Shown: positions 31,101 to 50,788 of the stretch, piece by piece
Layout: each line of letters opens with the position of its first letter
Numbering within the stretch: the stretch's first letter is position 1
Assembly (NCBI GenBank): GCA_965285935.1
Contig: OZ260663.1
Coordinates: forward strand, 90,954,001 to 91,018,000
Reading direction: 5' to 3'
From: Ophelia neglecta
Lineage: Eukaryota
Length of the DNA: 64,000 nt
Program-made: the position numbers and the translations under genes
Notes under the pieces: model-generated
What the model saw: the letters and a program-made list of their open reading frames with translations, nothing else
What the model was told of the DNA's origin: nothing
Databases searched by the model: none

Positions 31101-33869
31101 TGACCTGATCACATGGTGTTTCTCATAGCCAAAAGCAAGATCATGAGATTTTTCCAGCCAGGACAAGGAGATGGATTGTGGGTAGAAATTTTTCCATAAG
31201 TCAGACGCCTGTAAATACAATAGTCACAGACTTCCAGCATACATGAGTACACCAATAATGTTTCTAGATAATATACAAACAGTGTCACAGCAAATGTTAG
31301 AGCTTTCTTGTTAAAAGACCTATATATGTGTGCTGTAGGCATTTATGGCTAGTGATATTTCACAAACACATGACACATAAGTTAGCACACCTATAAGTTG
31401 GTCAGTCAGTCTTACATTCCATTGTTTCTTTTGGCTAAGACTGAATTGGTGATCACCCAAGTTATACACATTTGATTGGTGTTGTTAATAGGTGCTAATA
31501 TTGTCATCTTTGCAGTCATCTTCAATCTGGTTTTGAGTTCACTGGAAATGGTATGAACCTAAAGGTCCCTATATGAGATGCTGATACATCTTGTGTGCTG
31601 GGAGTACCCGGTATAACCCTATATTGTAGGGTAGCTTTGGAGAATATTTTGTATCTTTTGGGGATCGAGCACTTTTGGTGTCCTGGATAGGGGTTTTTGG
31701 GACAAAGGTTGCCCTAGATGTGAAGGTTTTCACAAGAAATTGCGTATGCCCCTTGGGGTCAATTTCTTGAACAGCCCTTAGTAACATTTGTGGAATGACT
31801 TGGTGTTTTGGGTATTCAGCAGCAGGATTTGTTTCCGATTATCTTTTACAGGACGAAGACGTTGATCTGGGTCAGTATGCCCTAGATTCTGATGATGCAG
31901 CAGAGATTTCGAAAGCAAAAGGGAAAAAGTCAAATTCCAGGTCATCTCGGTCAAGATCATCATCGTCAAGCTCCTCCAGGTCAAGCTCCAGCTCTAGGTC
32001 AAGGTCAAGGTCAAAACATGATAGGAAGAGGGATCACTCAAGATCTAGGTCAAGGTAACAAGGGTTAAAGGTCAAGGTCAATATCAGTTTTCATTGTTGT
32101 TCAAACACATGGACAACAGCTTTATCCATTTTTTAAATTGTTGTAGTAGTATGAATATTGTGACTTCCAAGTATTCATGTAATCAGCTGGTGACTTAGGT
32201 TAAGAGTTGTTAACTTAGGTTTCTTAAAAAGCCTACTGATTTTGAATTTTTTCCAATCCCAGTGCATAAAATGAAAGGCTAGAAAAGTAAAATTTACCTC
32301 AGTTCTGTTGGGCTAAATAACAATATTTGGTTATTTTTAAAGCCATAAATGTGTCATCCTTGAAGCTGTCAAATAGTATCTATGTTTTTGCTATTAACCA
32401 CTTGAGTGGTTTTAATAGTAAAATATACTGTGATAGTTTTGCTATGTATTTCAATATTGTGTCAGTGACAGGCAGTGAAAGTAAATCCTGCATTGCTGTG
32501 ACTTGGTGATATTTGAGAAACTGTTTTAGTCCGTCTGACAGTTGGCAATTCATCATTTTATTTAAGTTGTTATCAATGCGCACAACCTGTATGTGTTATA
32601 GGATAACATGTCCCTGTAACATAACATGTCCCTGTAACATAACATGTCCCTGTAACATAAAATCCTGTTACAAGATAAACTCCATCATTTACTATTGAGC
32701 ATGAGAAGAGAGTTTTATCCTAATGTCATGAAAAGATGGAACTTTGGTTATTGTCTACAAGCCCAGTCTTTGCGTTAAATGTCTCTTATCACACACATAC
32801 TTACTTTTGAGCAAATGCCATATTTCAAAAAATAATTATGATATTATGATATATAATGGATAAACTGACTTTAGATAACAAAAAAAAATACCATAAAAGC
32901 TTTGACCAACTTGATGTTGGATATATTTTATTAATTCCAAAAATGTAGAAATGTTTTTTGTTTTTATTTGTGAGTGAATATAAACATGGATATATTACCT
33001 AGGTTCCTATTTGTGAAGCAGATAATATTATATCTCTGTGTAAAAGTGGTCAGTGTGTGTGTGTGTGTTAACTGTCTGCCCATTCTCTTAGGTTCTTTGA
33101 TAGTTAGAACACAAACCAAAGTTGTAACAGTTCATGGCATAAGCAATGGTATTTGTATGAATCAGCTATCACTGTATTTTAACTTTGCCAGGTCTGCCTC
33201 TTCTGAACGGAAGCGCAGACGTCATTCTCGCAGTTCCAGCCAATCAAGGTCAAGTTCTAGGTCACGGTCAAGGGACAAAGGTCGCCGAGACAGCAAGAAG
33301 TCCACGAGGAGGTCGAGGTTTGGGGTTAAATCATCCGGCAGTGCTTATAAAACATCTCGGCTCTTAGACGTTAGACATTTTGAATCTGCTGAGAATCTTT
33401 ATTGCTGAATGGATTTTTAAAAGTCCGACCTGTGTTCTCTCTACCTGGAACAAATTTCAAATTTTAATGGCATTTTTCTTTTAATATAGTACAGTTTTAT
33501 TTTATTTGGCACATTCATCTTGGGGGAAAATATCGAACCACAGTTTCAAGGCCTATATTGATAAATAGAAAGATATTTCATGTTTAAGCACTGCTTGGAT
33601 AAAAAAAAAGTTTTATTTTCTTATTATATAGAAATTATTATACTGCTAAATAAAAATAATCTTCTAATTGCCTGAATTAATTTGACACCATGTTGTATTG
33701 TGTATAAGGCATGTGAATATATCAGATTTATCAATAATTTAACAGATGCTTCTTAAAGCATTATATAAATTTGCAATACACTTTATTGCCATATGAGTTG
33801 TTTTGATTTTTATCATGTTTATGTAGTATTTTTCTTCCCACCTCTTTCAGATCCAGTTCCAGATCTTAA
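22193..33869 (+). CDS. ZRANB2: Zinc finger Ran-binding domain-containing protein 2; exons 22193-22257, 25056-25238, 26645-26807, 30197-30379, 31852-32054, 33192-33317, 33851-33869
   Basis: Two RanBP2 zinc fingers (GDWVCSDPK|CGNVNFARRAQCNRC; SADDWQCKT|CGNVNWARRNTCNMC), RTGYGGGYMER, DEFGR..KKK, acidic tract and RS domain. All introns GT-AG and phase-consistent; TAA at 33867-33869. Confidence 0.95.
24025..24650. mobile_element. Degenerate TIR element with (tcgagcggg)n / (cccgctcga)n subterminal arrays
   Basis: Inverted arrays at 24038-24110 and 24578-24640; no clean TSD found. Confidence 0.55.
25288..25470. mobile_element. pogo/Tigger-like MITE, copy 3
   Basis: TA-cagggaaacctg...cagcattcactg-TA with the same internal motifs. 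Confidence 0.78.
25801..26159. mobile_element. 359-bp MITE with 9-bp TSD
   Basis: TIR tacccttcgcagcagag / ctctgctacgaagggaa (15/17); TSD ctgttgatg at 25792-25800 and 26160-26168. Confidence 0.82.
26887..26992. repeat. ~52-bp direct duplication
   Basis: ccaatgacataaaggttattccactgttgaatttgggggg..ttggaacc occurs twice. Confidence 0.85.
27394..28412. mobile_element. Tc1/mariner-like non-autonomous element nested in the hAT element
   Basis: ~50-bp TIRs (cgc[a/g]agg..ctatccgctac.acctataataactaa.ggtttgcaactc) flanked by TA on both sides. Confidence 0.8.
28489..28604. repeat. 33-bp tandem repeat x~3.5 (hAT subterminal)
   Basis: gggcctgtaactttttgatttacatgccctgat units with no spacers. Confidence 0.88.
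29030..29832 (+). mobile_element. 3' tail of a CR1/L2-like LINE in ZRANB2 intron 3
   Basis: Stem-loop gggcgtccag...ctggcgtcc, then AATAAA and a (CAAT)n tail; left boundary approximate. Confidence 0.5.
32603..32660. repeat. 18-bp tandem repeat x3
   Basis: ataacatgtccctgtaac x3. Confidence 0.9.
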
Positions 33870-35633
33870 AACTGAGAGAGATAAAGCAATGGTAGCCATT
33901 TTGTTAGCATTTGATGTGAAAGAAAACTGTTTAAAGAGGATGTTTGTAAATTTTGCAAGTTTTGGCATGCCCTGTACAAAATGATCCAATGGAATTTGAA
34001 ATGGAATTTGAAAATTTATTCAATCGTTGATCGTAAGAGTACTTAATGTTTGATCTATTTAACAGATACTGGTCCTGGGGATTTTTAAAGATATCTGCTA
34101 CCTCTGAAGATAATTATTCAGATCACAAGTAAACCATAATATCAAGATACATTGAAGTATTCAACCTCCATGAATTTGCGTATTATGTAAAATATTATGA
34201 TCAATATTATTACAGTGGGGGTAAGAGAAGTAGACGGAGATAAAGCTAGGGGAAGGGGGGTGGCCCAACCCAGGCAAGAAGGGGCCTACCCAGGTGCATA
34301 CCAATTTGGTCTTATTTTCCCCTCTTGTCAACAATTTCTGCCCCACCCCACCTCAAGGACAGAAGGTAGCCATGACATCTTAAACAGAAAAGAGATGAAT
34401 TTAGTAATGTTTTGGCCTTTTGAGTGTATGCTTCTCTTGTATTTTTGTTCAGCCAAAAATCCATTTATAATTATAAAGTGCTTATTTCCAAGATCAAGGT
34501 GACTTGTACAATAAATCATCTACTTGTAAGTAGTATGTACTAAAATGAAACGTCGCTGCACCAGTTAGTCAGCAGTATAATGGTGTAGCTAAGTTAAGTT
34601 CCATGAGACTAGATCTAGATGCATTTAGAAAATTAGATCTAGACTGTTCTTTTGAATATATAGAAATAGATCTAGGTTTGGTAGGCAATAAATACAGTCA
34701 ACCACCATTGTCAGACTCATTTTTACAAGCATTCAAGTTACTTTCTGATAAAAACTTGCATGGATATTAGCGTTTCCTGGTAAGTTCTATTCAGACTACA
34801 CTAAAAAGAAAGTTTGTTTAAATTCAGCCCTCCTGTTCAGTACCAATAGACACTGTTGAACCCTTCTATTTCATGAGCCTCTCATTTCGGCATTTCCCGC
34901 GTAGGGTCTAACCGGTTAATTGAAAAGATCATGCAAATATGGGCACAGTGAGGACATAGGCCTATTGCAGAAACCTCTAAAATGCAAATTAAGGGGCAGT
35001 GAAACAAGTTGTATGCCAAAAACGTGCACATTACTGGGCAGCAAATTTAAAGGGTTTACAATACATAATGGTAATATGTTTGTGGATGTTAAAATTTGAA
35101 GAAAATAAAATGGCGCTTGGCATGTTTCTAATTATGCAAAGGAATAATCAGGCTAAAATTTGCAAGTTTCGTGTTCGAGACCTAGCATTTTTTTTTGCAA
35201 AATTGGTGAATTTAAACCTGTGGGAACATTCTTACCGTTATGTACAGTATTTGACTCATTTTTAACACACAAATAAACATGATTTGCCGCTTGCCTCGGG
35301 CTGCAATTGGACGTCTGTAAGTATTGCTAAAAGTTCAGAGTGTGCACCCTGACCAAAAAGGTTCTATAGACTATCTGTAATGGTCAAATAATACAGCAGG
35401 ATTAATTGGCAATTTTTAGGATAACTGATTGGTTGCAAGATTAAAGCTCCCTGATATCGTAATTGTAAACATGTTTGTGCAGAATTAAATTTGTGCTTTT
35501 GCAAACAAAAATATTGTGTGTTTTATTTCATGGGTAGATATAATAAGGGCCACATGTGAATAGGATATTCATATGCATATACATCAGGGAAAGGGGTATT
35601 TCCCTATCCCATTAGTCTAGTGGGGATTTGTAT

Positions 35634-35967
35634 TGTGGTAGTCGAAATTCCCGCCCTGTTTAGTTCTTGTAATTACCACCGCCAGCATTAACGCCAAAAC
35701 TATTAGATATCCTCTTCTGATTGGTCCTACGTAGCCCACTGTGTTTGGCGGTATCCCACTAGAGGCATTCAGCCACTAGCTCCGCTAACCACAAGATGTT
35801 TTCAGCTCTCTTGGACACAATCCAGTTCCTTACTGGATTTATTGTTATAACTAGGTCTATTGCACGTGTTAACTGCACTGTACATAATGATGCTAGACGG
35901 AATAAAATTCCTATGAACCCAAATAACGATAGGCCTAGAGCATGAGTGTTCTTTTCTCTATACCACC
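35634..35967 (+). repeat. 5' LTR, copy 1 (334 bp)
   Basis: Matches 44246-44579 (3 differences counted) and 50463-50788; AATAAA at 35901; terminal CA mutated to CC. Confidence 0.93.
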
Positions 35968-35969
35968 AA

Positions 35970-36041
35970 TGGCGCCCGATGTGGGGCTCGAACTCACGAC
36001 CCTGGGATTAAGAGTCCCATGCTCTACCGACTGAGCTAATC
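35970..36041 (-). tRNA. tRNA-Lys(CTT)-derived sequence (positions ~5-76 incl. CCA) forming an extended Gypsy PBS; not a canonical tRNA gene
   Basis: Minus strand reads GATTAGCTCAGTCGGTAGAGCATGGGACTCTTAATCCCAGGGTCGTGAGTTCGAGCCCCACATCGGGCGCCA: D arm, CTT anticodon arm, T arm and encoded CCA; 5' GCCC missing. Confidence 0.88.
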
Positions 36042-36323
36042 CTAATCCTGCGCTTATCCCATTTTTGTTTTATTTCATTGATGTGACTGCATGATTGGTT
36101 ATATATATGCTCCAAATATTGAACTTATTATTTATGTTAGTTAAGTGACTAGGGTATTGTACCTTTTAGTGGTTCTCCCAACCTTGAGGCATCTCATCCC
36201 AAGTCACGAGTCGTGTGTGAAGTGAGGTACCTGTTAGATGGTGGTTTGGACTATATACCTGTTGGTATCCTGTTGTTGCGTATAAGAATAATTATTTTGC
36301 AAGTATTGGGTCATTCTTGCACT

Positions 36324-37465
36324 ATGTCTGATCTGGACGAAACTGAGATCACTAGAGATAACTTCTTAGCATTAAGAGAAGAATTGAATAACCTAAAGGT
36401 AAGCTATTATGAACTTAAGTCGAAGTCCGACTTGGGTGAGGTTAAGCCTGAAACATTGCCTAAGGAGATAATTGAGCATCAACAGGCTGTGGTGATATCC
36501 AGGGAAAAAAGTTTTCCAAATTATCTGGTCGGGCATGTATCCTGGTGATCCAAACGTGAAAGAGTGGATTCAAGATTTATCTCTGTACTTGAAATCCCAA
36601 AACTTGAATGATAATGAAAAAAGATCTCTTGTTCTTGAGCATCTAACTGGAGATGCAAAGAGAGAGGCTAGGTTTAGACTTCGTCCAAACACGACATATT
36701 CTGACTTGTTAGAAATTATTGGTGAAGTTTTCAGTGATCACCAATCCCTATCATCACTACAAAAAGAGTTTTATACAAGAGTTCAGGCTAAGGACGAGTC
36801 TTTACTTTCTTATTCTATCAGGTTATTAGATATGATGAATTGGATATCACAAGAGACTGGTATGTCTATGCAGGAGGTGGATTCTGCACTCATAGAGAGA
36901 TTCTCTGAGGGTATAATTGATGAATCCCTTAAGAGAGATCTTCGCAGACTCCACGAAGAGAGCCCTCGTCTCCTCTTCCATGAATTAAGAGACAAGGCTA
37001 TAAGGTGGACACTAGATGGTCAACCTACAGATAGAACTGCAAATATTCAGTCAAATTTAGTGTCTGCAAAGGCCGAAAGTAGTATTTTAAAGACCTTAGA
37101 AGAACAGCAAAAGCAAATTTCAATGCAGACTAATAATTATGGAAAAAATGTTAGATAGATTAGAACCTGGGTCTAGAAATAGGTCAAAGTCTAGGGCAAA
37201 GCAGGATCCCAAATCTAAGAGTGATACCAAGTCAAAGTCTGATACTAGGACTAGTAGTAAAGGTCGTGATCAACGCCCCAAGGTTGAAATAAAATGCTAT
37301 AATAGTGGAGGTCTCGGTCACAAAAGTCCAGACTGTCCATCAGCAAAGGGTATTCTTAAGGGTCGATGGACAGGGAAGGGTGATGGTGTTTCATACCAGA
37401 ATAAAGATAGTCCCACACAATACGAGGATGCTGGCAGCCGCGAGAACAGCCATTCGTCAAACTAG
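36324..37465 (+). pseudogene. Gypsy gag, frameshifted (copy 1)
   Basis: ORFs 36213-36548, 36535-37158 and 37139-37465 join by frameshifts; CYNSGGLGHKSPDC is a CCHC knuckle with C>S. Confidence 0.88.
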
Positions 37466-37479
37466 AGCCTCCCTACAAT

Positions 37480-40400
37480 GTGAGCCAATTGCAGGGGAAT
37501 GTTGAGGCAGGCTCGGTTGTTTTAGAAAACTGGTGTAGTTCCGCGGTTGGCCAGTGCCATCACGATGAAATATTATTAGGTGGTGTTTTAACAAAGTGCC
37601 TGTTGGACACAGGGGCCCATGGGTCCCTAATCAAGAATTCCTTCTTTATTGACAACTTTGAGAGCAAAATTGACAGTGTTCAAACCGATATCACTAATTA
37701 AAGGCTTTCAGCAGCAAATGGCATTAGCATTCCTTATTTGGGTATTGTCTGTCTTGATCTGGAAATTGGTGACCAAATATTTAAAGATCAAGTATTTTTT
37801 CTTGAAAATGCCAATGACTCTAGTAATAACGGCGCTGGTGTTACCATTGGTTGCAACATTTTTAGGAACATTGGTTCTTTTGGCAGTGCTGTTGCAAATA
37901 AACTGCCACCAGCATGGAAAAGTTTGGTATCTCTGTATGTAGACTCTGATTCTCAGTCCAAAGCATCACTGATCCAAATTGGTGGCCAGCCAGAACTTGT
38001 ACCAGCTAGGTCTGTTAAGATAATCCGTGGGCGATAATCTTTTACGACAGGTAAAATGGTCCGTGGCTTAGTGCAGGCAGTTAGTGGTAACTCTGGTTCA
38101 CTACCGAGAAACCTGATGATTGTTGATACGTACCCTGAGATCAGTAACAGAAATGTTAATGTTAAATGTGTCAATCTAAGTGATAATGATGTTTGGCTAC
38201 CAGCGAAATCCCTAGTGGGCGTATTGTATATAGATGCAAAGGCTGAGCAAACTCCAACACAGATTGATGTAGATGTAGTGAATGGAAATATAGAGATTTC
38301 TGTGCATAAAAATACGGTTGCTATTGAACAGTCAATTCCGCAGGTCCCGCAAATTACTAAGCTAGAGGATTGCCCTGATTGGCTAAGGGACGTTCAGTTT
38401 CCTGACGAATTTTCAGAATCTCAGAGACTGAGCGCTATGAACTTGCTTGGTGATAATTCTGACATTTTCTCCAATCAGAAGACACCAAATTGGGTTTTAC
38501 AACCTCAGTTACACATAAGATACAATTAACAGATGAAAAACCGGTGAAGATTCCACACAGACGAATCCCACCACAGCTTATTACAGAGGTCAAGGAGCAC
38601 CTAGACAAACTCCTTCAACAGAACATAATAAGACACAGCACAAGCCCTTATGCTGCTCCTGTAGTTCTTGTTAGAAAAAAAGACAACAGTCTACGCTTAT
38701 GCGTTGATTATAGACAGTTGAACAGTAAAACGGTAAAGGATGCTTATCCATTGCCAAGGATAGATGAGGTTCAACCTATTTTTCATCGTTGGACCTGAAC
38801 CAAGGATACCAACAAGTTCCTATGGATGAAGGTGATATTGCTAAGACTGCGTTTAGAGTTGGAACGGGAGGACTTTATGAATACTTACGGATGCCTTTCG
38901 GCCTTTGTAATAGCCCTGGTACATTTCAACGGTTGATGGAAATGTGCTTTCAACAACAAAATTTTGAAATCCTGATCTTGTTCTTGGATGATGTTCTGGT
39001 TTTCTCCAAAACTTTTGAAGAGCATATCCAACGCCTACAAACAGTATTTTCCATACTGAGAAAACATAATTTGAAATTGAAGCTTAAGAAATGTAATTTT
39101 TTTCAAAGCGAGGTGAAATATTTAGGCCACATTGTAGGAAAAGACGGCATAAAAACTGATTCAGACAAGACGAAAGCTATTGATGAATGGCCAGTTCCCA
39201 AGACAGAACCTGAACTACGTAGTTTTCTCGGTCTCGCCGGGTACTATAGGAAATTTGTTCACAATTTCGCTAAGATAGCTTTCCCTCTTCATAAGCTGTT
39301 GGGAAAAACTCCCAAGAAAAAAGGTCGCAAAAAGCAAGTGACAAATAACGAACAATTCCTCACGAAATGGAATGATGAGTGTACCACTGCGTTTGCCACC
39401 CTCAAAGATAGATTGGTAAATTCGCCCATTTTAGGTTATCCAGACTTTGGTAGAGAGTTTGTACTCGAAACCGATGCCAGTTTTCAAGGTTTGGGTGCAG
39501 TCTTAAGTCAAGAGCAAGAGCACGGGAAGGAAGTCATAGCATGTGCATCACGAAGTCTAAAACAGGCCGAAAATAACGAAAAAAAATTACAGTTCAATGA
39601 AATTAGATCTGTTAGCACTTAAATGGGCCATCACGGACAAATTCAAAGACTACCTCATTGGTTGTCCTGGTTTTGTAGTCTTTACAGATAACAACCCTCT
39701 GAGTTATCTACAATCCGCCAAGTTAGGGGCAACAGAAACTAGATGGGCTGCTCAATTAGCACAGTATAATTTCACTGTGAAATATAGGTCAGGCAATAGC
39801 AACGCGAATGCTGATGCCTTCAGTAGGAGGTCAGAAATAGATCAACAACAGGTAGAACATACGTTGCAAGACATCGGCGACACAACTGTCATTCCCCTCA
39901 CTGGGACATGTATATCTCAGGTCTCAATAAAACCAGAAATCCTCTCTGCTTGGTCCCAAGAATACACCCATGACCAACTAGTGGATTCTCAAAATACTGA
40001 CAGTGTTATTGGTCGCTTTGTAAAAAATCTTTGAAAACCCCAAACCTACTAAACGTCAAGTCTCAAAGGAAAACTGGGAAGTACGTAGACTCTGTAGTCA
40101 GTGGGAAAAACTCAGGCTTGATAATGGCCTCCTGTACAGAGTGGTGTTAAATGAAGGTGTTGAGCTTTGGCAGCTAGTAATCCCAGAAGCACTGAGAAAC
40201 CATATATTACAATTAGCTCATGATAACTGTTGCCATCAAGGCATTGAACGCACTTTCTCTCTTGTACGAAAAAAGTGTTATTGGGTAAAAATGCACAACG
40301 ACGTGGAAAAGTGGTGCTCCAAAGGTCGCCGATGCATGTTGGCTAAAAGCGCACCTGCAACCCCTTCTATTGATAACTTAATTGCTCAACAACCACTCGA

Positions 40401-41501
40401 AATTCTAGCGATAGATTTTACTATCCTTGACCAATCATCCGACGGCACAGAGAACGTTTTGGTTATGACAGATATATTTACCAAATTCTCTAAAGCTGTG
40501 CCAACAAAGAATCAGAAGGCAACTACTGTGGCTAAAATTCTCGTCAACGGATGGCTCGCCCACTACGGCTAACCTCGTAGGTTACACTCCGACCAGGGTA
40601 GAAACTTCGAAAGCCTAGTAATCCAAGAATTATGCAAGCTCTATGGTATTAAGAAAACCAGAACTACTGCATACCACCCAGAAGGAAATGGCCAAACAGA
40701 AAGATTTAATAGAACCATGCACAACCTTTTGCGCACTATCCCTATTGATCAAAAGAGAAAATGGCCCACCTATCTACCTGAACTTACGTATGTCTACAAT
40801 TGTACGCCCCACAAAGCAACAGGCTTGTCCCCTTACTATCTAATGTTTGGAAGAGACCCTATTCTCCCCATTGACATGGCATTGGGTGTTCAAGAATGTA
40901 CCGAAGTAAACTATTCCATAGATGAATGGCTTGAAAAACATCATGAAAATTTACAATCTGCATATGAACATGCACTATCTAAAATTGAGCAAACAGCCAC
41001 CAAGAGACGAACCAAATACAATGAAAAGTCTCACGTTAACGATAAAATCATTCCGATAGGTGCAAAGGTTTTTCTTCGAAAAAGAATACTTGGGAGAAAT
41101 AAAATACAAGATATATGGGATGCTGAACCATATGTAGTTATTTCCAAACCGAGTAACAATGTCTATACGGTTAAGCCTGTGTCCGATTCGGGTGTGACCC
41201 AAAATATGTGTAGGTCAGAAATATTGGACTCTAGAGAATGTTTCCAGGATTCTAGTTCTAATACACAGTCTGACCAGGAAATGATCACAGAAGATAAATC
41301 GATCGACAGCACTGATATTGACGAAAATACATCACTAAATAATGAAGATATTGGGGTCAAAATAACAATTCCTGGAAAAACTGTCCGCCTAGGTTATGTG
41401 CCTGATAATGTTATGTACCCCAATGAAAACAACAAATTGAACCAAGAAAACAATGATGAAAATCGAAATAGTGAAATAAATGAGTTAGGTGATGGTGAAT
41501 C
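37480..41501 (+). pseudogene. Gypsy pol, fragmented (copy 1)
   Basis: Protease, RT, RNase H and integrase motifs spread over about 8 ORF pieces. Confidence 0.92.
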
Positions 41502-42095
41502 AGGTGGATAGCTTCAGACTGGACGGACGTATTGTCTGGAGCTGCAAACGTTTTTCATTTTTTCTCTCATTGGAATGTTTTTTTCCGGTTGGAAAAGGGA
41601 TATTAACCTCATCGGCAGAGAAGAGAACCTGTAAGGGAGTTGTTTTGTCGAAATTATTTTCTTCTGGTGAGAAATTTAAACTTTTAAGCTTTTGAAGGCC
41701 CCGGTCCTCCCTATATCGCCCACTTTTAATTAATTCACTGCATAAACATAGGAACTATCCTGGACTTTAGCGGTTAAGGGGTGTGAAAGCCTATTTCGGC
41801 TCATGCCGACCACAAACAATACCCTGTGGCTTTCACAGTAAACCTGACACTACGACAAGGACGGTCATGTCAGATAGTGAGGAAAGCGGCTTTGAGGCCA
41901 CTCAAACGGAGGAGGATTTTATCAATGTGGTAAAAGAAAAATATGGAAAATTACCCCGTGAGGACTTTGTTACGGCTATTTGTGAGGATATTGGAGTAGA
42001 TGTCATTAAACAAACCCGTGGGGCTATATACGATTACTGTCGAGAGCATATACCCGACACACCCGTAGGGAGGTTGATTACAAGAAAGAACAAAG
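41502..42095. other. Unique 594-bp filler at the duplication junction, with a truncated ORF (ATG 41867, MSDSEESG...GRLITRKNK)
   Basis: No second copy seen in the window; the ORF is cut at the breakpoint and loosely resembles a non-LTR ORF1 N-terminus (impression only). Confidence 0.6.
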
Positions 42096-42462
42096 ATAGT
42101 ACAGTTTTATTTTATTTGGCACATTCATCTTGGGAGAAAATATAGAACCACAGTTTCAAGGCCTATATTGATAAATAGAAAGATATTTCATGTTTAAGCA
42201 CTGCTTGGATAAAAAAAAAAGTTTTATTTTCTTATTATATAGAAATTATTATACTGGTAAATTAAAATAATCTTCTAATTGCCTGAATTAATTTGACACC
42301 ATGTTGTATTGTGTATAAGGCATGTGAATATATCAGTTTTCATCAATAATTTAACAGATGCTTCCTAAAGCATTATATAAATTTGCAATACACTTTATTG
42401 CCATATGAGTTGTTTTGATTTTTATCATGTTTATGTAGTATTTTTCTTCCCACCTCTTTCAG

Positions 42463-42481
42463 ATCCAGTTCCAGATCTTAA
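42463..42481 (+). other. ZRANB2: Duplicated ZRANB2 terminal exon (followed by a 3'UTR copy)
   Basis: Same acceptor (cacctctttcag) and ATCCAGTTCCAGATCTTAA as 33851-33869, inside the tandem duplication. Confidence 0.85.
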
Positions 42482-44245
42482 AACTGAGAGAGATAAAGCA
42501 ATGGTAGCCATTTTGTTAGCATTTGATGTGAAAGAAAACTGTTTAAAGAGGATGTTTGTAAATTTTGCAAGTTTTGGAATTGCCCTGTACAAAATGATCC
42601 AATGGAATTTGAAATGGAATTTGAAAATTTATTCAATCGTTGATCTTAAGAGTACTTAATGTTTGATCTATTTAACAGATACTGGTCCTGGGGATTTTTA
42701 AAGATATCTGCTACCTCTGAAGATAATTATTCAGACCACAAGTAAACCATAATATCAGGATACATTGAAGTATTCAACCTCCATGAATTTGCGTATTATG
42801 TAAAATATTATGATCAATATTATTACAGTGGGGGTAAGAGAAGTAGACAGAGATAAAGCTAGGGGAAGGGGGGTGGCCCAACCCAGGCAAGAAGGGGCCT
42901 ACCCAGGTGCATACCAATTTGGTCTTATTTTCCCCTCTTGTCAACAATTTCTGCCCCACCCCACCTCAAGGACAGAAGGTAGCCATGACATCTTAAACAG
43001 AAAAGAGATGAATTTAGTAATGTTTTGGCCTTTTGAGTGTATGCTTCTCTTGTATTTTTGTTCAGCCAAAAATCCATTTATAATTATAAAGTGCTTATTT
43101 CCAAGATCAAGGTGACTTGTAAAATAAATCATCTACTTGTAAGTAGTATGTACTAAAATGAAACGTCGCTGCACCAGTTAGTCAGCAGTATAATGGTGTA
43201 GCTAAGTTAAGTAACATGAGACTAGATCTAGATGCATTTAGAAAATTAGATCTAGACTGTTCTTTTGAATATATAGAAATAGATCTAGGTCTGGTAGGCA
43301 ATAAATACAGTCAACCACCATTGTCAGACTCATTTTTACAAGCATTCAAGTTACTTTCTGATAAAAACTTGCATGGATATTAGCGTTTCCTGGTAAGTTC
43401 TATTCAGACTACACTAAAAAGAAAGTTTGTTTAAATTCAGCCCTCCTGTTCAGTACCAATGGACACTGTTGAACCCTTCTATTTCATGAGCCTCTCATTT
43501 CGGCATTTCCCGCGTAGGGTCTAACCGGTTAATTGAAAAGATCATGCAAATTAGAGGCACAGTGAGGACATAGGCCTATTGCAGAAACCTCTAAAATGCA
43601 AATTAAGGGGCAGTGAAACAATTTGTATGCCAAAAACGTGCACATTACTGGGCAGCAAATTTAAAGGGTTTACAATACATAATGGTAATATGTTTGTGCA
43701 TGTTAAAATTTGAAGAAAACAAAATGGCGATTGGCATGTTTTTAATTATGCAAAGGAATAATCAGGCTAAAATTTGCAAGTTTCGTGTTCGAGACCTAGC
43801 ATTTTTTTTGCAAAATTGGTGAATTTAAACCTGTGGGAACATTCTTACCGTTATGTACAGTATTTGACTCATTTTTAACACACAAATAAACATGATTTGC
43901 CGCTTGCCTCGGGCTGCAATTGGACGTCTGTAAGTATTGCTAAAAGTTCAGAGTGTGCACCCTGACCAAAAAGGTTCTATAGACTATCTGTAATGGTCAA
44001 ATAATACAGCAGGATTAATTGGCAATTTTTAGGATAACTGATTGGTTGCAAGATTAAAGCTCCCTGATATCGTAATTGTAAACATGTTTGTGCAGAATTA
44101 AATTTGTGCTTTTGCAAACAAAAATATTGTGTTTTATTTCATGGGTAGATATAATAAGGGCCCCATACATGTGAATAGGATATTCATATGCATATACATC
44201 GGGGAAAGGGGTATTTCCCTATCCCAGTCTAGTGGGGATTTGTAT

Positions 44246-44579
44246 TGTGGTAGTCGAAATTCCCGCCCTGTTTAGTTCTTGTAATTACCACCGCCAGCAT
44301 TAACGGCAAAACTATTAGATATCCTCTTCTGATTGGTCCTACGTAGCCCACTGTGTTTGGCGGTAACCCACTAGAGGCATTCAGCCACTAGCTCCGCTAA
44401 CCACAAGATGTTTTCAGCTCTCTTGGACACAATCCAGTTCCTTACTGGATTTATTGTTATAACTAGGTCTATTGCACGTGTTAACTGCACTGTACATAAT
44501 GATGCTAGACGGAATAAAATTCCTATGAACCCAAATAACGATAGGCCTAGAGCATGAGTGTTCTTTTCTCTATACCACA
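44246..44579 (+). repeat. 5' LTR, copy 2 (334 bp)
   Basis: TG...CA ends with a 7-bp terminal inverted repeat; followed by an AA spacer and the PBS. Confidence 0.95.
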
Positions 44580-44581
44580 AA

Positions 44582-44653
44582 TGACGCCCGATGTGGGGCT
44601 CGAACCCACGACCCTGGGATTAAGAGTCCCATGCTCTACCGACTGAGCTAATC
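44582..44653 (-). tRNA. tRNA-Lys(CTT)-derived extended PBS, copy 2
   Basis: Same 72 nt; T stem intact (GTGGG/CCCAC); CCA mutated to TCA. Confidence 0.88.
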
Positions 44654-44950
44654 CTAATGCTGAGCTCATCTCATTTTTGTTTAATTTCATTGATGTGGTT
44701 GCATGATTGGTTATATATATGCTCCAAATATTGAACTTATTATTTATGTTAGTTAAGTGAAATTTGATGTGATTTGACTAGGGTATTGTACCGTTTAGTG
44801 GTTCTCCCAACCTTGAGGCATCTCATCCCAAGTCACGAGTCGTGTGAAGTGAGTTACCTGTTAGATAGTGGTTTGGACTATATACCTGTTGGTATCCTGT
44901 TGTTGCGTATAAGAATAATTATTTTGCAAGTATTGGGTCATTCTTGCACT

Positions 44951-46093
44951 ATGTCTGATCTGGACGAAACTGAGATCACTAGAGATAACTTCTTAGCATT
45001 AAGAGAAGAATTGAATAACCTAAAGGTTAGCTATTATGAACTTAAGTCGAAGTCCGACTTGGGTGAGGTTAAGCCTGAAACATTGCCTAAGGAGATAATT
45101 GAGCATCAACAGGCTGTGGTGATAACCAGGGAAAAAAAGTTTTCCAAATTATCTGGTCGGGCATGTATCCTGGTGATCCAAACGTGAAAGAGTGGATTCA
45201 AGATTTATCTCTGTACTTGAAATCCCAAAACTTGAATGATAATGAAAAAAGATCTCTTGTTCTTGAGCATCTAACTGGAGATGCAAAGAGAGAGGCTAGG
45301 TTTAGACTTCGTCCAAACACGACATATTCTGACTTATTAGAAATTATTGGTGAAGTTTTCAGTGATCACCAATCCCTATCATCACTACAAAAAGAGTTTT
45401 ATACAAGAGTTCAGGCTAAGGACGAGTCTTTACTTTCTTATTCTATCAGGTTATTAGATATGATGAATTGGATATCACAAGAGACTGGTATGTCTATGCA
45501 GGAGGTGGATTCTGCACTCATAGAGAGATTCTCTGAGGGTATAATTGATGAAACCCCTTAAGAGAGATCTTCGCAGACTCCACGAAGAGAGCCCTCGTCT
45601 CCTCTTCCATGAATTAAGAGACAAGGCTATAAGGTGGACACTAGATGGTCAACCTACAGATAGAACTGCAAATATTCAGTCAAATTAAGTGTCTGCAAAG
45701 GCCGAAAGTAGTATTTTAAAGACCTTAGAAGAACAGCAAAAGCAAATTTCAATGCAGACTAATATTATGGAAAAAATGTTAGATAGATTAGAACCTGGGT
45801 CTAGAAATAGGTCAAAGTCTAGGGCAAAGCAGGATCCCAAATCTAAGAGTGATACCAAGTCAAAGTCTGATACTAGGACTAGTAGTAAAGGTCGTGATCA
45901 ACGCCCCAAGAGAGAAATAAAATGCTATAATAGTGGAGGTCTCGGTCACAAAAGTCCAGACTGTCCATCAGCAAAGGGTATTCTTAAGGGTCGATGGACA
46001 GGGAAGGGTGATGGTGTTTCATACCAGAATAAAGATAGTCCCACACAATACGAGGATGCTGGCAGCCGCGAGAACAGCCATTCGTCAAACTAG
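44951..46093 (+). pseudogene. Gypsy gag, frameshifted (copy 2)
   Basis: Homologous to copy 1, with an additional frameshift and stop. Confidence 0.88.
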
Positions 46094-46107
46094 AGCCTCC
46101 CTACAAT

Positions 46108-49100
46108 GTGAGCCAATTGCAGGGGAATGTTGAGGCAGGCTCGGTTGTTTTAGAAAACTGGTGTAGTTCCGCGGTTGGCCAGTGCCCTCACGATGAAATA
46201 TTATTAGGTGGTGTTTTAACAAAGTGCCTGTTGGACACAGGGGCCCAAGTGTCCCTAATCAAGAATTCCTTCTTTATTGACAACTTTGAGAGCAAAATTG
46301 ACAGTGTTCAAACCGATATTACTAATTATAGGCTTTCAGCAGCAAATGGCATTAGCATTCCTTATTTTGGTATTGTCTGTCTTGATCTGGAAATTGGTGA
46401 CCAAATATTTAAAGATCAAGTATTTTTTCTTGAAAATGCCAATGACTCTAGTAATAACGGCGCTGGTGTTACCATTGGTTGCAACATTTTTAGGAACATT
46501 GGTTCTTTTGGCAGTGCTGTTGCAAATAAACTGCCACCAGCATGGAAAAGTTTGGTATCTCTGTATGTAGACTCTGATTCTCAGTCCAAAGCATCACTGA
46601 TCCGAATTGGTGGCCAGCCAGAACTTGTACCAGCTAGGTCTGTTAAGATAATCCGTGGGCGATAATCTTTTTCGACAGGTAAAACGGTCCGTGGCTTAGT
46701 GCAGGCAGTTAGTGGTAACTCTGGTTCACTACCGAGAAACCTGATGATTGTTGATACGTACACTGAGATCAGTAACAGAAATGTTAATGTTAAATGTGTC
46801 AATCTAAGTGATAATGATGTTTGGCTACCAGCGAAATCCCTAGTGGGCGTATTGTATATAGATGCAAAGGCTGAGCAAACTCCAACACAGATTGATGTAG
46901 ATGTAGTGAATGGAAATATAGAGGTTTCTGTGCATAAAAATACGGTTGCTATTGAACAGTCAATTCCGCAGGTCCCGCAAATTACTAAGCTAGAGGATTG
47001 CCCTGATTGGCTAAGGGACGTTCAGTTTCCTGACGAATTTTCAGAATCTCAGAGACTGAGCGCTATGAACTTGCTTGGTGATAATTCTGACACTTTCTCC
47101 AATCAGAAGACACCAAATTGGGTTTTACAACCTCAGTTACACATAAGATACAATTAACAGATGAAAAACCGGTGAAGATTCCACACAGACGAATCCCACC
47201 GCACCTTATTCCAGAGGTCAAGGAGCACCTAGACAAACTCCTTCAACAGAACATAATAAGACACAGCACAAGCCCTTATGCTGCTCCTGTAGTTCTTGTT
47301 AGAAAAAAAGACAACAGTCTACGCCTATGCGTTGATTATAGACCGTTGAACAGTAAAACGGTAAAGGATGCTTATCCATTGCCAAGGATAGATGAGGTTC
47401 AACCTATTTTTCATCGTTGGACCTGAACCAAGGATACCAACAAGTTCCTATGGATGAAGGTGATATTGCTAAGACTGCGTTTAGAGTTGGAACGGGAGGA
47501 CTTTATGAATACTTACGGATGCCTTTCGGCCTTTGTAATAGCCCTGGTACATTTCAACGGTTGATGGAAATGTGCTTTCAACAACAAAATTTTGAAATCC
47601 TGAATTTGTTCTTGGATGATGTTCTGGTTTTCTCCAAACTTTTGAAGAGCATATCCAACGCCTACAAACAGTATTTTCCATACTGAGAAAACATAATTTG
47701 AAATTGAAGAAATGTAAATTTTTTCAAAGCGAGGTGAAATATTTAGGCCACATTGTAGGAAAAGACGGCATTAAAGCTGATTCAAGACGAAAGCTATTGA
47801 TGAATGGCCAGTTCCCAAGACAGAACCTGGAGTGACAAATAACGAATCATTTCTCACGAAATGGAATGATGAGTGTACCACTGCGTTTGCCACCCTCAAA
47901 GATAGATTGGTAAATTCGCCCATTTTAGGTTATCCAGACTTTGGTAGAGAGTTTGTACTCAAAACCGATGCCAGTTTTCAAGGTTTGGGTGCAGTCTTAA
48001 GTCAAGAGCAAGAGCACGGGAAGGTAGTCATAGCATATGCATCACGAAGTCTAAAACAGGCCGAAAATAAAGAAAAAAAATTCCGTTCAATGAAATTAGA
48101 TCTGTTAGCACTTAAATGGGCCATCACGGACAAATTCAAAGACTACCTCATTGGTTGTCCTGGTTTTGTAGTCTTTACAGATAACAACCCTCTGAGTTAT
48201 TTACACTCCGCCAAGTTAGGGGCAACAGAAACTAGATGGGCTGCTCAATTAGCACAGTATAATTTCACTGTGAAATAAAGGTCAGGCAAAAGCAACGCGA
48301 TGCTGATGCCTTGAGTAGGAGGTCAGAAATAGATCAACAACAGGTAGAAGATACGTTGCAAGACATCGGCGACACAACTGTCATTCCCCTCACTAGGACA
48401 TGTATATCTCAGGTCTCAATAAAACCAGAAATCCCCTCTGCTTGGTCCCAAGAATACACCCATGACCAACTAATGGATTCTCAAAATACTGACAGTGTTA
48501 TTGGTCGCTTTGTAAAAATCTTTGAAAACCCCAAACCCACTTAACGTCAAGTCTCAAAGGAAAACTGGGAAGTACGTAGACTCTGTAGTCAGTGGGAAAA
48601 ACTCAGGCTTAAAAATGGCCTCCTGTACAGAGTGGTGTTAATGAAGGTGTTGAGCTTTGACTGCTAGTAATCCCAGAAGCACTGAGAAACCATATATTAT
48701 AATTAGCTCATGATAACTGTGGCCATCAAGGCATTGAACGCACTTTCTCTCTTGTACGAAAAAAGTGTTATTGGGTAAAAATGCACAACGACGTGGAAAA
48801 GTGGTGCTCCAAATGTCGCCGATGCATGTTGGCTAAAAGCGCACCTGCAACCCCTTCTATTGATAACTTAATTGCTCAACAACCACTCGAAATTCTAGCG
48901 ATAGATTTTACTATCCTTGACCAATCATCCGACGGCACAGAGAACGTTTTGGTTATGACAGATATATTTACCAAATTCTCTAAAGCTGTGCCAACAAAGA
49001 ATCAGAAGGCAACTACTGTGGCTAAAATTCTCGTCAACGGATGGCTCGCCCACTACGGCTAACCTCGTAGGTTACACTCCGACCAGGGTAGAAACTTCGA

Positions 49101-50186
49101 AAGCCTAGTAATCCAAGAATTATGCAAGCTCTATGGTATTAAGAAAACCAGAACTACTGCATACCACCCAGAAGGAAATGGCCAATCAGAAAGATTTAAT
49201 AGAACCATGCACAACCTTTTGCGCACTATCCCTATTGATCAAAAGAGAAAATGGCCCACCTATCTACCTGAACTTACGTATGTCTACAATTGTACGCCCC
49301 ACAAAGCAACAGGCTTGTCCCCTTACTATCTAATGTTTGGAAGAGACCCTATTCTCCCCATTGACATGGCATTGGGTGTTCAAGAATGTACCGAAGTAAA
49401 CTATTCCATAGATGAATGGCTTGAAAAACATCATGAAAATTTACAATCTGCATATGAACATGCACTATCTAAAATTGAGCAAACAGCCACCAAGAGACGA
49501 ACCAAATACAATGAAAAGTCTCACGTTAACGATAAAACCATTCCGATAGGTGCAAAGGTTTTTCTTCGAAAAAGAATACTTGGGAGAAATAAAATACAAG
49601 ATATATGGGATGCTGAACCATATGTAGTTATTTCCAAACCGAGTAACAATGTCTATACGGTTAAGCCTGTGTCCGATTCGGGTGTGACCCGAAATATGTG
49701 TAGGTCAGAAATATTGGACTCTAGAGAATGTTTCCAGGATTCTAGTTCTAATACACAGTCTGACCAGGAAATGATCACAGAAGATAAATCGATCGACAGC
49801 ACTGATATTGATGAAAATACATCACTAAATAATGAAGATATTGGGGTCAAAATAACAATCCCTGGAAAAAATGTCCGCTTGGTTATGTGCCTGATAATGT
49901 TATGTACCCCAATGAAAACAACAAATTGAACCAAGAAAACAATGATGAAAATCGAAATAGTGAAATAAATTAGTTAGGTGATGGTGAATCCGATAATGAT
50001 AACGTTGAAAATCATTTAAATGAAATTAATGACTCGTTGATACCTAATCAACCGCCTGAACTACGTAGATCTCGGAGAGAGAATATTGGGAAACATCCAA
50101 ACCCCAACAATCTGCCCCGTTCCGTACTTAGTTCGAAGAGCATTGTTTGCACTGAAGATATTTCTAATCAGGAGGTTTTTGTGTAA
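46108..50186 (+). pseudogene. Gypsy pol, fragmented (copy 2)
   Basis: LLDTGAQVS, FLDD, TDAS and integrase core; C-terminal RRSRRENIGKHPNPNNLP, stop at 50184-50186. Confidence 0.92.
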
Positions 50187-50450
50187 CCTAAATTGAATAT
50201 CCTAAAATTTTCAATGTCCTACTTATTCCGTGTACTGTGTGATAGGCTATATTGTGTACTAAATACTGCACAAATTGATGCAGTGCAAGTGGAATATGTT
50301 TTGCTAGCTTATATTGAATTGCAGTGGAATTCCAGGCCGGCTGTATGATTCGGCTTAGTAATGTATTTAAATGCGCATTTGTAATTATGCTTTTATCATT
50401 ACAGAAATACCAAAAAAAAAAAATTATAATCATGAGATCATGATTTTTTT

Positions 50451-50460
50451 AGTGGGGAGG
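50451..50460 (+). promoter_or_regulatory. Polypurine tract of the Gypsy element
   Basis: T-run then agtggggagg, 2 nt before the 3' LTR. Confidence 0.85.
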
Positions 50461-50462
50461 TA

Positions 50463-50788
50463 TGTGGTAGTCTAGATTTCCGCCCTGTTTAGTTCTTGTA
50501 TTACCACCGCCAGCATTAACGCCAAAACTATTAGATATCCTCTTCTGATTGGTCCTACGTAGCCCACTGTTTTTGGCGGTAACTCATTAGAGGCATTCAG
50601 CCACTAGCTCCGCTAACCACAAGACGTTTCAGCTCTCTTGGACACAATCCAGTTCCTTACTGGATTTATTGTTATAACTATTGCACGTGTTAACTGCAGT
50701 GTACATTATGATGCTAGACGGAATAAAATTCCTATGAACCCAAATAACTATAAGCCTAGAGCATGAGTGTTCTTTTCTCTATACCACA
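50463..50788 (+). repeat. 3' LTR (326 bp)
   Basis: Preceded by the PPT; about 12 substitutions and 3 indels versus the 5' LTR by manual count. Confidence 0.95.

What the first reader, a model, noticed from the sequence alone, without database searches (positions are those of the whole stretch)
35970..36041. Gypsy PBS is a 72-nt antisense copy of almost the entire mature tRNA-Lys(CTT); the element may carry its own primer template or a Pol III unit
Seen: 2 nt after the 5' LTR, in both copies (35970-36041, 44582-44653), complementarity to tRNA-Lys(CTT) runs from the CCA through the T, anticodon and D arms to about position 5. The retained 5' GAT pairs perfectly with the 3' ATC of the acceptor stem (GCCCGAT/ATCGGGC), so this looks like a real isodecoder rather than drift. 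Established: LTR-element PBSs are normally <=18 nt because plus-strand copying of the primer stops at m1A58, and eukaryotic tRNA genes do not encode CCA. Inference: the sequence came from reverse transcription of the mature primer far past m1A58 and was fixed in the element. On the minus strand it keeps an A box (TAGCTCAGTCGG) and B box (GTTCGAGCC), and the first T4 lies ~63 nt into the LTR (35904-35907). Pol III could therefore make a tRNA-plus-antisense-U5 RNA that acts as a self-supplied primer or a regulator. Alternatively the sense genome could unfold or sponge whole tRNA-Lys or its fragments. This differs from tRNA/5S pieces lying inside the LTRs of TRIMs, because it sits at the PBS of a gag-pol element.
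Basis: partly seen in the sequence, partly recalled or inferred. Interest (0 to 1): 0.85.

Follow-up and report, generated by a model that had tools for sequence, protein, structure and literature searches.

The report
Primer tRNA copied into a retrotransposon
One degenerate Ty3/gypsy retrotransposon copy, later duplicated in tandem, carries a near-complete reverse-transcribed copy of its tRNA-Lys primer where about 1.2 kb of leader was lost; this is a scar of a known reverse-transcription error, not a built-in primer or Pol III gene.

Summary
Two bases after the LTR, at 35970-36041 and 44582-44653, lies a 70-72-nt antisense copy of tRNA-Lys(CTT), starting with the complement of CCA. The host's own tRNA-Lys(CTT) genes have a 26-nt intron and no CCA. 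The copy lacks the intron exactly, so it came from the mature primer tRNA.

The two "copies" are not independent. They sit in an 8.6-kb tandem segmental duplication that also includes 2.1 kb of upstream flank.

About ten other 5' ends of the same family carry a 13-23-nt PBS followed by a 1.2-kb leader. The window copy has lost 1,175 bp of that leader, and the tRNA extension sits exactly at the deletion junction. No other copy in the genome shares this junction. The ORFs are fragmented.

This matches "deferred second-strand transfer", described for defective HIV-1 proviruses: plus-strand strong-stop DNA reads through the primer tRNA, then lands downstream.

At least eight further loci in this genome, several in related LTR families, show 44-76-nt intronless, CCA-bearing copies. 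Some are followed directly by truncated gag or RT.

The self-primer / Pol III reading is unsupported, and the claimed GAT isodecoder does not match the host genes. Interest is modest.

The parts
33483..35633 (.). Upstream flank 'X', copy A of the tandem duplication. It is not homologous to the family's internal region. Its last bases hold a PPT-like 9-mer (TAGTGGGGA).
35634..35967 (+). 5' LTR, copy A (starts TGTGGTAGTC, ends ...ATACCACC).
35904..35907 (-). First T4 run on the minus strand downstream of the tRNA-like copy.
35970..35987 (+). Canonical 18-nt PBS: complement of tRNA-Lys(CTT) positions 76-59, including CCA.
35988..36039 (+). Read-through extension: complement of tRNA positions 58 to 7, without the intron. 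36040-36041 (TC) may be positions 6-5 with one mismatch, or filler.
36040..36052 (+). About 13 nt of filler between the tRNA copy and the point where homology to full-length relatives resumes. It contains a CTAATC repeat.
36053..41501 (+). Internal region of copy A (equivalent to L035 2033-7518). It holds gag (PNMA, zf-CCHC), RT, RNase H and integrase, all in fragmented ORFs. It is cut short by the duplication breakpoint.
41502..42092 (.). 591-bp filler at the tandem-duplication junction. It matches nothing else fetched.
42093..44245 (.). Upstream flank 'X', copy B.
44246..44579 (+). 5' LTR, copy B. This is the 5' LTR of the complete element.
44582..44653 (+). Antisense tRNA-Lys(CTT) copy B. 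The CCA complement is mutated to TGA. tRNA positions 73 to 7 are identical to the host exons.
44665..50449 (+). Internal region of copy B, colinear with L035 2033-7969, ending in the PPT.
50463..50788 (+). 3' LTR of the element (K2P 0.038 to the 5' LTR), followed by the flank GTCT.

Best explanation
The stretch is a fossil of one faulty round of reverse transcription in a Ty3/gypsy element primed by tRNA-Lys(CTT).

Proposed sequence of events:
1. During plus-strand strong-stop synthesis the reverse transcriptase did not stop at A58 of the primer. The primer was still attached to the minus-strand DNA.
2. The enzyme copied the mature tRNA down to about position 7.
3. The extended 3' end could no longer pair at the PBS. 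It transferred instead to a site about 1.2 kb downstream in the leader, leaving about 13 nt of filler.
4. The integrated product is LTR - AA - 70-nt tRNA complement - filler - 3' part of the leader - gag-pol - LTR, with 1,175 bp of leader deleted.
5. Later an 8.6-kb tandem segmental duplication (flank, 5' LTR and most of the interior) produced the second copy.

Shown: mature-tRNA origin, the deletion junction, uniqueness within the family, the duplication, and recurrence at other loci.
Inferred: the order of events in the particle (read-through, then aberrant transfer), and how the plus-strand version became fixed in both strands.

The structure has no demonstrated function.
For: 1. MATURE-tRNA ORIGIN
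- 20 genuine host genes sampled (L049-L068) carry a 26-nt intron after position 37. They lack CCA and are followed by a T run.
- The window copy has the CCA complement, lacks the intron exactly, and is 67/67 identical to the exons.

2. DELETION JUNCTION
- Against full-length relatives L035 and L036, the window matches the LTR and the start of the PBS.
- It then resumes at L035 2033 / L036 2285. L035 858-2032 is missing, and the tRNA extension fills the gap.

3. NOT A FAMILY TRAIT
- Other 5' ends of the family have 13-21 nt of complementarity plus the normal leader: L005, L006, L012, L013, L015, L024.
- Only the two window copies match across the junction.

4. OTHER PBS-ADJACENT REARRANGEMENTS IN THE FAMILY
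- 20 nt followed by a 1.43-kb leader deletion (L037).
- 22 nt followed by an inverted leader (L022).
- 23 nt followed by unrelated DNA (L018/L038).
- In each case the complementarity is perfect up to the break. Most normal copies carry mismatches at PBS positions 14, 17 and 20.

5. RECURRENCE ELSEWHERE IN THE GENOME
- L041-L048 carry 44-76-nt intronless copies with the CCA complement. Most follow related LTR ends.
- In L043 an ORF that starts inside RVT_1 begins 164 nt from the start of the tRNA copy (about 90 nt after its end). In L044 a gag ORF (PNMA) that starts at profile position 33 begins 83 nt from the start of the tRNA copy (about 10 nt after its end).

6. KNOWN PRECEDENT
- Defective HIV-1 proviruses carry tRNA(Lys-3) inserts of 7-54 nt that define the deletion junction. 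This is attributed to deferred second-strand transfer after read-through of m1A58 (PMC12657518).
- m1A58 and m5Um54 are the normal RT stop sites (PMC8599865).

7. ONE EVENT, NOT TWO
- The two window copies lie in a tandem duplication that includes non-element flank.
Against: - The mechanism is reconstructed from the end product. No replication intermediate was observed.
- The 13-nt filler and the T at tRNA position 6 are not explained in detail.
- A PPT-like 9-mer lies just upstream of the 5' LTR. This hints that the original DNA may have had further irregularities.
- The target-site duplication is imperfect (GTAT vs GTCT).
- Sequence differences between the two tandem copies are locally concentrated around the junction: 10 substitutions in 120 nt against about 1.2% overall. 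This is unexplained.
Confidence: 0.85

Rival explanations
1. Reader's idea. The antisense tRNA copy plus U5 is a Pol III transcription unit. It would supply the element with its own primer or with a regulatory tRNA-antisense-U5 RNA.
For: - A-box and B-box letters are retained on the minus strand. The first T4 lies 63-66 nt past the CCA, at 35904-35907.
- SINEs and the Helenus TRIMs show that tRNA-derived Pol III promoters can work inside retroelements (PMC10886601).
Against: - It is a single insertion event and not a family feature.
- tRNA positions 1-6 are missing, so no acceptor stem can form, and ARAGORN calls nothing. Without that stem, RNase P and RNase Z processing to a free CCA-3'OH is implausible (established tRNA biology), and a primer needs that free end.
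- Copy 1 has a change in the first B-box base. Copy 2 has a mutated CCA complement.
- The element's ORFs are broken.
- The host has many genuine tRNA-Lys(CTT) genes.
- Transcription itself is untested.
Confidence: 0.03
2. The long complementarity is a selected, extended primer-binding site. In the sense genomic RNA it would unfold and bind the whole tRNA-Lys, or sponge tRNA fragments.
For: - Extended primer-template contacts beyond 18 nt are known in retroviruses (PMC8599865).
- Normal members of this family already pair with up to 21 nt.
Against: - No other insertion has the long form with this junction.
- It coincides with a large leader deletion, as an error scar would.
- The long copies at other loci end at different tRNA positions and sit next to different deletions, including deletions into gag and RT. 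This is the opposite of a conserved functional module.
Confidence: 0.03
3. An unrelated tRNA-derived SINE or tRNA retro-pseudogene happened to insert at the PBS, or the element recombined with a tRNA gene at the DNA level.
For: tRNA-Lys-derived SINEs are common in animals (own knowledge; PMC9223172).
Against: - The copy is antisense and starts exactly where the family's own PBS starts. It is in register with that PBS, beginning with the CCA complement 2 nt after the LTR.
- It has no SINE body or tail.
- DNA-level recombination with a gene is excluded by the absent intron and the present CCA.
Confidence: 0.03
4. Assembly artefact: a chimeric read or a mis-join created the junction, the tandem duplication, or both.
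For: - The two tandem copies differ by about 1.2%. In a heterozygous genome that level could reflect two haplotypes placed in tandem.
Against: - The junction is present in both diverged copies, with private substitutions in each.
- Analogous structures occur at at least eight other loci on five contigs.
Confidence: 0.04

Closest known systems
Deferred (aberrant) second-strand transfer with primer-tRNA insertion in defective HIV-1 proviruses (Hardy et al. 2025, PMC12657518). From my own memory, Olsen & Swanstrom 1985 described the same kind of product for avian retrovirus DNA; that paper was not available here.
   Same: - The insert starts at the PBS and continues colinearly into the primer tRNA beyond position 58.
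- It defines the 5' edge of an internal deletion.
- The LTR is intact and the product is defective.
   Different: - The host and element differ: a germline-fixed Ty3/gypsy retrotransposon primed by tRNA-Lys(CTT), not a somatic lentiviral provirus primed by tRNA-Lys3.
- The inserts are longer: 52 nt beyond the PBS here, and the full 76-nt tRNA at other loci, against 7-54 nt reported.
- The missing tRNA intron gives an extra proof of mature-tRNA origin.
RT stop sites m1A58 and m5Um54 in primer tRNA, with PBS complementarity conserved up to one base before position 54 (Fukuda et al. 2021, PMC8599865)
   Same: - Normal family members pair with 21 nt, which is past A58.
- Three rearranged copies break after 20, 22 and 23 nt, which is inside the T loop near position 54.
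   Different: The modification status of this host's tRNA-Lys(CTT) is unknown. Nothing about it was measured here.
Helenus, Ajax and Cassandra (TRIMp3): non-autonomous LTR elements with tRNA- or 5S-derived Pol III promoters (Kojima 2024, PMC10886601)
   Same: A tRNA-like sequence with A and B boxes is physically part of an LTR retroelement.
   Different: - In those elements the small-RNA piece lies inside both LTRs and is a heritable family feature. It shows no complementarity to the PBS.
- Here it is at the PBS, antisense, in one insertion of an autonomous-type element, and it is not inherited by other copies.
Strong-stop-DNA model for the origin of tRNA-Lys-derived SINEs (Ohshima et al. 1993; title seen, content from my own memory)
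   Same: The minus strand here reads tRNA-Lys, then CCA, then 2 nt, then antisense U5. That is the arrangement the model invokes.
   Different: No dispersed SINE-like family with these boundaries was seen. The copies found are parts of LTR elements.

Membership tests
Ty3/gypsy (Metaviridae) LTR retrotransposon | Direct LTRs with TG...CA termini that flank an internal region | tested here: met
   The LTRs are 44246-44579 and 50463-50788, running TGTGG...CCACA.
Ty3/gypsy (Metaviridae) LTR retrotransposon | Domain order gag - protease - RT - RNase H - integrase (RT before integrase) | tested here: met
   Pfam hits, in order: PNMA gag at 36535-37158, a weak zf-CCHC at 37139-37465, RVT_1 with RNase H at 38789-40034, and Integrase_H2C2 at 40141-40572. 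There is a weak RVP hit in copy B. The ORFs are fragmented.
Ty3/gypsy (Metaviridae) LTR retrotransposon | PBS complementary to a tRNA 3' end just after the 5' LTR, and a PPT before the 3' LTR | tested here: met
   The PBS starts 2 nt after the LTR. A purine-rich TAGTGGGGAGGTA lies before the 3' LTR.
Ty3/gypsy (Metaviridae) LTR retrotransposon | Short target-site duplication | tested here: inconclusive
   Relatives have 4-bp duplications: L035 TTAA, L036 ATTA. The window element has GTAT against GTCT, 3 of 4 matching.
Deferred second-strand-transfer product (primer-tRNA insert at a deletion junction) | The insert is contiguous with the PBS and colinear with the primer tRNA beyond position 58 | tested here: met
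Deferred second-strand-transfer product (primer-tRNA insert at a deletion junction) | The template was the mature primer tRNA, not a gene | tested here: met
   The CCA complement is present and the 26-nt intron of the host genes is absent.
Deferred second-strand-transfer product (primer-tRNA insert at a deletion junction) | The insert marks an internal deletion relative to intact relatives, and the LTR is intact | tested here: met
   1,175 bp of leader (L035 858-2032) is missing.
Deferred second-strand-transfer product (primer-tRNA insert at a deletion junction) | Sporadic: not shared by independent insertions of the family | tested here: met
   About ten other 5' ends have 13-23 nt. Only the two window copies cross the junction. 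The genome search scores only the best candidates, so this count is a lower bound.
Functional tRNA gene / Pol III unit | A complete cloverleaf with an acceptor stem | tested here: not met
   ARAGORN finds no tRNA in the window. Positions 1-6 are missing.
Functional tRNA gene / Pol III unit | Transcription by Pol III | not testable with these tools
No RNA run holding the stretch was listed.
TRIMp3 (Helenus/Cassandra-like) | A small-RNA-derived sequence inside both LTRs of a short non-autonomous element | tested here: not met
   The tRNA copy lies outside the LTR. The third LTR has none after it. The element is about 6.5 kb and carries gag-pol remains.
tRNA-derived SINE | A dispersed multi-copy family with its own boundaries and a tRNA head | tested here: not met
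   The searches returned only LTR-element contexts. The searches are not exhaustive.

The most novel reading that the evidence does not exclude
In this genome, a clade of Ty3/gypsy elements primed by tRNA-Lys(CTT) reads through its primer unusually often. Three of eleven 5' ends in one family carry 69-76-nt copies, and at least nine loci are affected in all.

This would imply that the host tRNA-Lys(CTT) lacks an effective m1A58/T54 block, or that this reverse transcriptase bypasses it.

The resulting antisense units (tRNA, CCA, then U5) keep intact A and B boxes. They would be natural raw material for tRNA-Lys-derived SINEs, giving genomic support to the strong-stop-DNA origin model.
Probability: 0.1. 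Interest if true: 0.6.

Novelty: new member of a known kind. Interest (0 to 1): 0.3.

Why it matters
The locus is a clean natural example of a reverse-transcription error. It shows that reverse transcriptase can copy a whole mature, spliced, CCA-tailed tRNA primer. It also shows that the product can integrate in the germline and persist.

Practical consequences:
- Such scars can be mistaken for tRNA genes or pseudogenes, or for exotic "long PBS" elements, in annotation.
- A census of these scars gives a cheap readout of where RT stops on a native tRNA. The end points seen here are positions 1, 1, about 6, 7, 8, 8, about 14, 20 and 33.
- The same census shows how often the second strand transfer fails in a non-model host.

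The finding does not reveal a new system.

Tried and rejected
- ARAGORN on the window found no tRNA, so the copy is not a recognisable gene.

- I looked for independent insertions with the long form. None share the junction.

- I considered that the 2.1-kb stretch upstream of the LTR might be part of a long LTR or of an upstream tandem element. I rejected this as the main reading. The third LTR lacks it, and it matches no fetched family member. A PPT-like 9-mer at its end remains unexplained.

Only local scripts on files already fetched used them.

A full census of family B and of SINE-like copies was therefore not possible. Only the hit table was used.

- Papers by Olsen & Swanstrom 1985, Ohshima et al. 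1993 and Lauermann & Boeke 1997 are not held. They are cited from memory or by title only.

- The search of earlier findings returned nothing.

- The protein atlas gave only generic RT clusters and no useful taxon. The host organism remains unidentified.

Full report
1. WHAT IS THERE

The window holds three copies of a roughly 330-bp LTR, running TGTGGTAGTC...ATACCACA. They lie at 35634-35967, 44246-44579 and 50463-50788.

The stretch 44246-50788 is a complete element. It is colinear with full-length relatives elsewhere in the genome, such as L035 and L036.

The interior carries Ty3/gypsy domains in the expected order:
- a PNMA-type gag;
- a weak zinc knuckle;
- a weak protease;
- RT with RNase H;
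- the integrase zinc domain.

These are spread over many short ORFs. The longest ORF is 277 aa, so both copies are degenerate. The 5' and 3' LTRs differ by K2P 0.038 plus small indels.

2. THE TWO "COPIES" ARE ONE EVENT

33483-41501 and 42093-49990 form a tandem duplication at about 98% identity (K2P about 0.012). The two halves are separated by a 591-bp filler.

The duplicated unit contains:
- 2.1 kb of upstream sequence that matches no fetched family member;
- the 5' LTR;
- the tRNA copy;
- the interior up to the equivalent of L035 position 7518.

The two tRNA copies therefore descend from a single insertion. They do not corroborate each other.

3. THE OBSERVATION ITSELF

Two bases (AA) after the LTR, an antisense copy of tRNA-Lys(CTT) begins with the complement of CCA.

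I located genuine host genes for comparison (L049-L068; most lie in a cluster on contig C9). They have three relevant properties:
- They carry a 26-nt intron after position 37.
- They end without CCA and are followed by a T run.
- Their acceptor stem reads GCCCGGT, paired to ATCGGGC with a G6.U67 wobble.

The window copy lacks the intron exactly and has the CCA complement. Copy B is 67/67 identical to the exons from position 73 down to position 7. Copy A has one change, at position 52.

The source was therefore the mature, spliced, CCA-tailed tRNA.

The secure match ends at position 7 (70 nt). The next letters, TC, differ from the host's CC at position 6.

4. NOT A FAMILY TRAIT

A search of the host genome with the LTR plus downstream sequence found many family members. 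Reading their 5' ends gave the following:
- Six independent elements have 13 perfect bases, or 21 bases with 3-4 mismatches, followed by a leader.
- One has 21 perfect bases followed by the same leader.
- One has 20 bases followed by a 1.43-kb leader deletion (L037).
- One has 22 bases followed by an inverted leader (L022).
- One has 23 bases followed by unrelated sequence (L018/L038).

Only the window has 70-72 bases. No other locus matches across the window's junction. The search scores only the best candidates, so absence is not absolute.

5. THE tRNA EXTENSION MARKS A DELETION

Relative to L035 and L036, the window element matches the LTR and the start of the PBS. It then skips 1,175 bp of leader (L035 858-2032) and resumes at the motif TTATCCCATTTTTG.

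Between the two points lie the tRNA extension and about 13 nt of filler. The filler contains a short CTAATC repeat.

6. THE SAME SCAR OCCURS ELSEWHERE IN THE GENOME

Eight further loci carry intronless copies with the CCA complement. Their lengths are:
- L041: 69 nt
- L042: 76 nt
- L043: 76 nt
- L044: about 71 nt
- L045: 69 nt
- L046: 57 nt
- L047: about 62 nt
- L048: 44 nt

Most of these follow LTR ends of the ATACCACA-AA type, that is, related families.

L041-L043 share a nearly identical LTR but diverge right after the tRNA copy.
- In L043 an ORF begins 164 nt from the start of the tRNA copy, about 90 nt after its end. That ORF starts inside the RT domain (RVT_1 profile 60-203).
- In L044 a gag ORF begins 83 nt from the start of the tRNA copy, about 10 nt after its end. 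It starts at PNMA profile position 33.
- In L042 the full tRNA copy is followed by about 10 nt resembling the end of U5 and then a second, short PBS.

In the hit table for that family, eight 5' ends extend only 11-12 nt into the PBS, and three extend through the long form.

7. MECHANISM

The simplest account is read-through of the primer during plus-strand strong-stop synthesis, followed by transfer to a downstream site. The extended 3' end can no longer pair at the PBS.

This has been described for HIV-1. Defective proviruses carry tRNA(Lys-3) inserts of 7-54 nt that define the deletion junction. The authors attribute this to deferred second-strand transfer after failure of the m1A58 stop (PMC12657518). 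m1A58 is the primary RT stop and m5Um54 a secondary one, and retroviral complementarity is conserved up to one base before position 54 (PMC8599865).

Two local details fit this account:
- Rearranged copies in this family are perfectly complementary to the tRNA up to the break, as expected if that stretch was copied from the tRNA. Most normal copies carry inherited mismatches at PBS positions 14, 17 and 20.
- Three of the breaks fall after 20-23 nt, inside the T loop.

What is inferred rather than shown: the order of events inside the particle, the origin of the filler, and how the plus-strand version became fixed on both strands.

8. THE FUNCTIONAL IDEAS

A Pol III unit on the minus strand cannot be excluded by sequence alone. 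The A-box and B-box letters are there, and the first T4 is at 35904-35907. Several points argue against it:
- The copy lacks tRNA positions 1-6, so no acceptor stem can form, and ARAGORN calls nothing.
- A transcript ending in U5 would not have the free CCA end that a primer needs. This follows from established tRNA processing.
- Copy A has a change in the first B-box base, and copy B has a changed CCA complement.
- The element is dead, and the form never spread.

The sponge or extended-PBS idea fails on the same census. It also fails because the long copies at other loci end at different tRNA positions, next to different and destructive deletions.

I could not test transcription. Local scripts continued to work on files already fetched.

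9. COMPARISON AND NOVELTY

By mechanism, the closest known thing is the HIV-1 class of proviruses with a tRNA insert at a deletion junction. The window element meets every feature of that class that I could test.

It is not a Helenus- or Cassandra-type element. In those, the small-RNA piece sits inside both LTRs and is heritable (PMC10886601).

The minus-strand arrangement (tRNA, CCA, then antisense U5) is what the strong-stop-DNA model of SINE origin invokes (Ohshima et al. 1993; title, content from memory). No dispersed family of that kind was seen.

I found no paper describing such scars in germline LTR retrotransposons. The library is incomplete, so this is weak evidence of novelty.

I rate the finding as a new member of a known kind, of modest interest. 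The recurrence at nine or more loci is the most interesting aspect.

10. LOOSE ENDS
- A PPT-like 9-mer lies just upstream of the window's 5' LTR.
- The target-site duplication is imperfect (GTAT against GTCT).
- Substitutions between the two tandem copies are concentrated at 35967-36087.
- The host organism is unidentified.

Noticed in passing
L049-L068 (mostly G000 contig C9, 6.84-7.57 Mb; also C2, C12, C1): The genuine host tRNA-Lys(CTT) genes all carry a 26-nt intron after position 37 and occur in a large cluster. An intron in tRNA-Lys(CTT) is unusual for animals, as far as I know.
   Followed up: partly
L042 (G000:C2:95278924-95278993, minus strand): A complete 76-nt antisense tRNA-Lys copy that ARAGORN calls as a tRNA with CCA. 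It is followed by about 10 nt resembling the end of U5 and a second short PBS. The LTR pair is about 7.9 kb apart, so the interior may be largely retained.
   Followed up: partly
L043 (G000:C1:37465402-37465471) and L044 (G000:C1:12867859-12867928): In L043 the full-length tRNA copy is followed by an ORF that starts inside RVT_1, 164 nt from the start of the tRNA copy (about 90 nt after its end); the LTR pair is only about 4 kb apart. In L044 a copy of about 71 nt is followed by a gag ORF that starts at PNMA profile position 33, 83 nt from the start of the tRNA copy (about 10 nt after its end).
   Followed up: yes
L022/L025 (G000:C12:53345039-53345844): A head-to-head structure: LTR, then a 22-nt PBS, then an inverted leader, inverted PBS and inverted LTR end. 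It looks like a snap-back product of reverse transcription.
   Followed up: no
L037 (G000:C12:25512200-25520100) about 1140: A family member with a 20-nt PBS joined directly to the sequence just before gag, a leader deletion of about 1.43 kb. There is possible GGG(G)(C)TC microhomology at the junction.
   Followed up: partly
L038 (G000:C5:21160900-21170800) about 1347-1372: An LTR followed by AA and a 23-nt PBS, then sequence unrelated to the family. There is no interior and no 3' LTR within 8.5 kb. It could be a truncated copy or an integrated strong-stop-like fragment.
   Followed up: no
window 35967-36087 vs 44579-44700: The two tandem copies differ at 10 positions in about 120 nt around the LTR-tRNA-filler junction, against about 1.2% over the whole duplication. 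This is unexplained.
   Followed up: partly
window 35618-35633 and 44230-44245: The bases just upstream of the 5' LTR (TAGTGGGGA...) resemble the polypurine tract that precedes the 3' LTRs of the family. This may be chance, or it may be a retained PPT primer ('untidy end').
   Followed up: partly
window 41502-42092: A 591-bp filler at the tandem-duplication junction with no match to the rest of the window or to any fetched locus.
   Followed up: partly
family LTRs, e.g. L036 721-983 vs window 35836-35857: Most family members carry about 250 bp of extra sequence in the middle of the LTR. The window's LTRs and those of L035 lack it.
   Followed up: no
window 55401-56282 (-): An ORF of 293 aa with a Glyco_transf_61 domain (E 1.3e-9). 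It is probably an exon of a host gene. A neighbouring ORF at 56752-57651 (-) has no Pfam hit.
   Followed up: no
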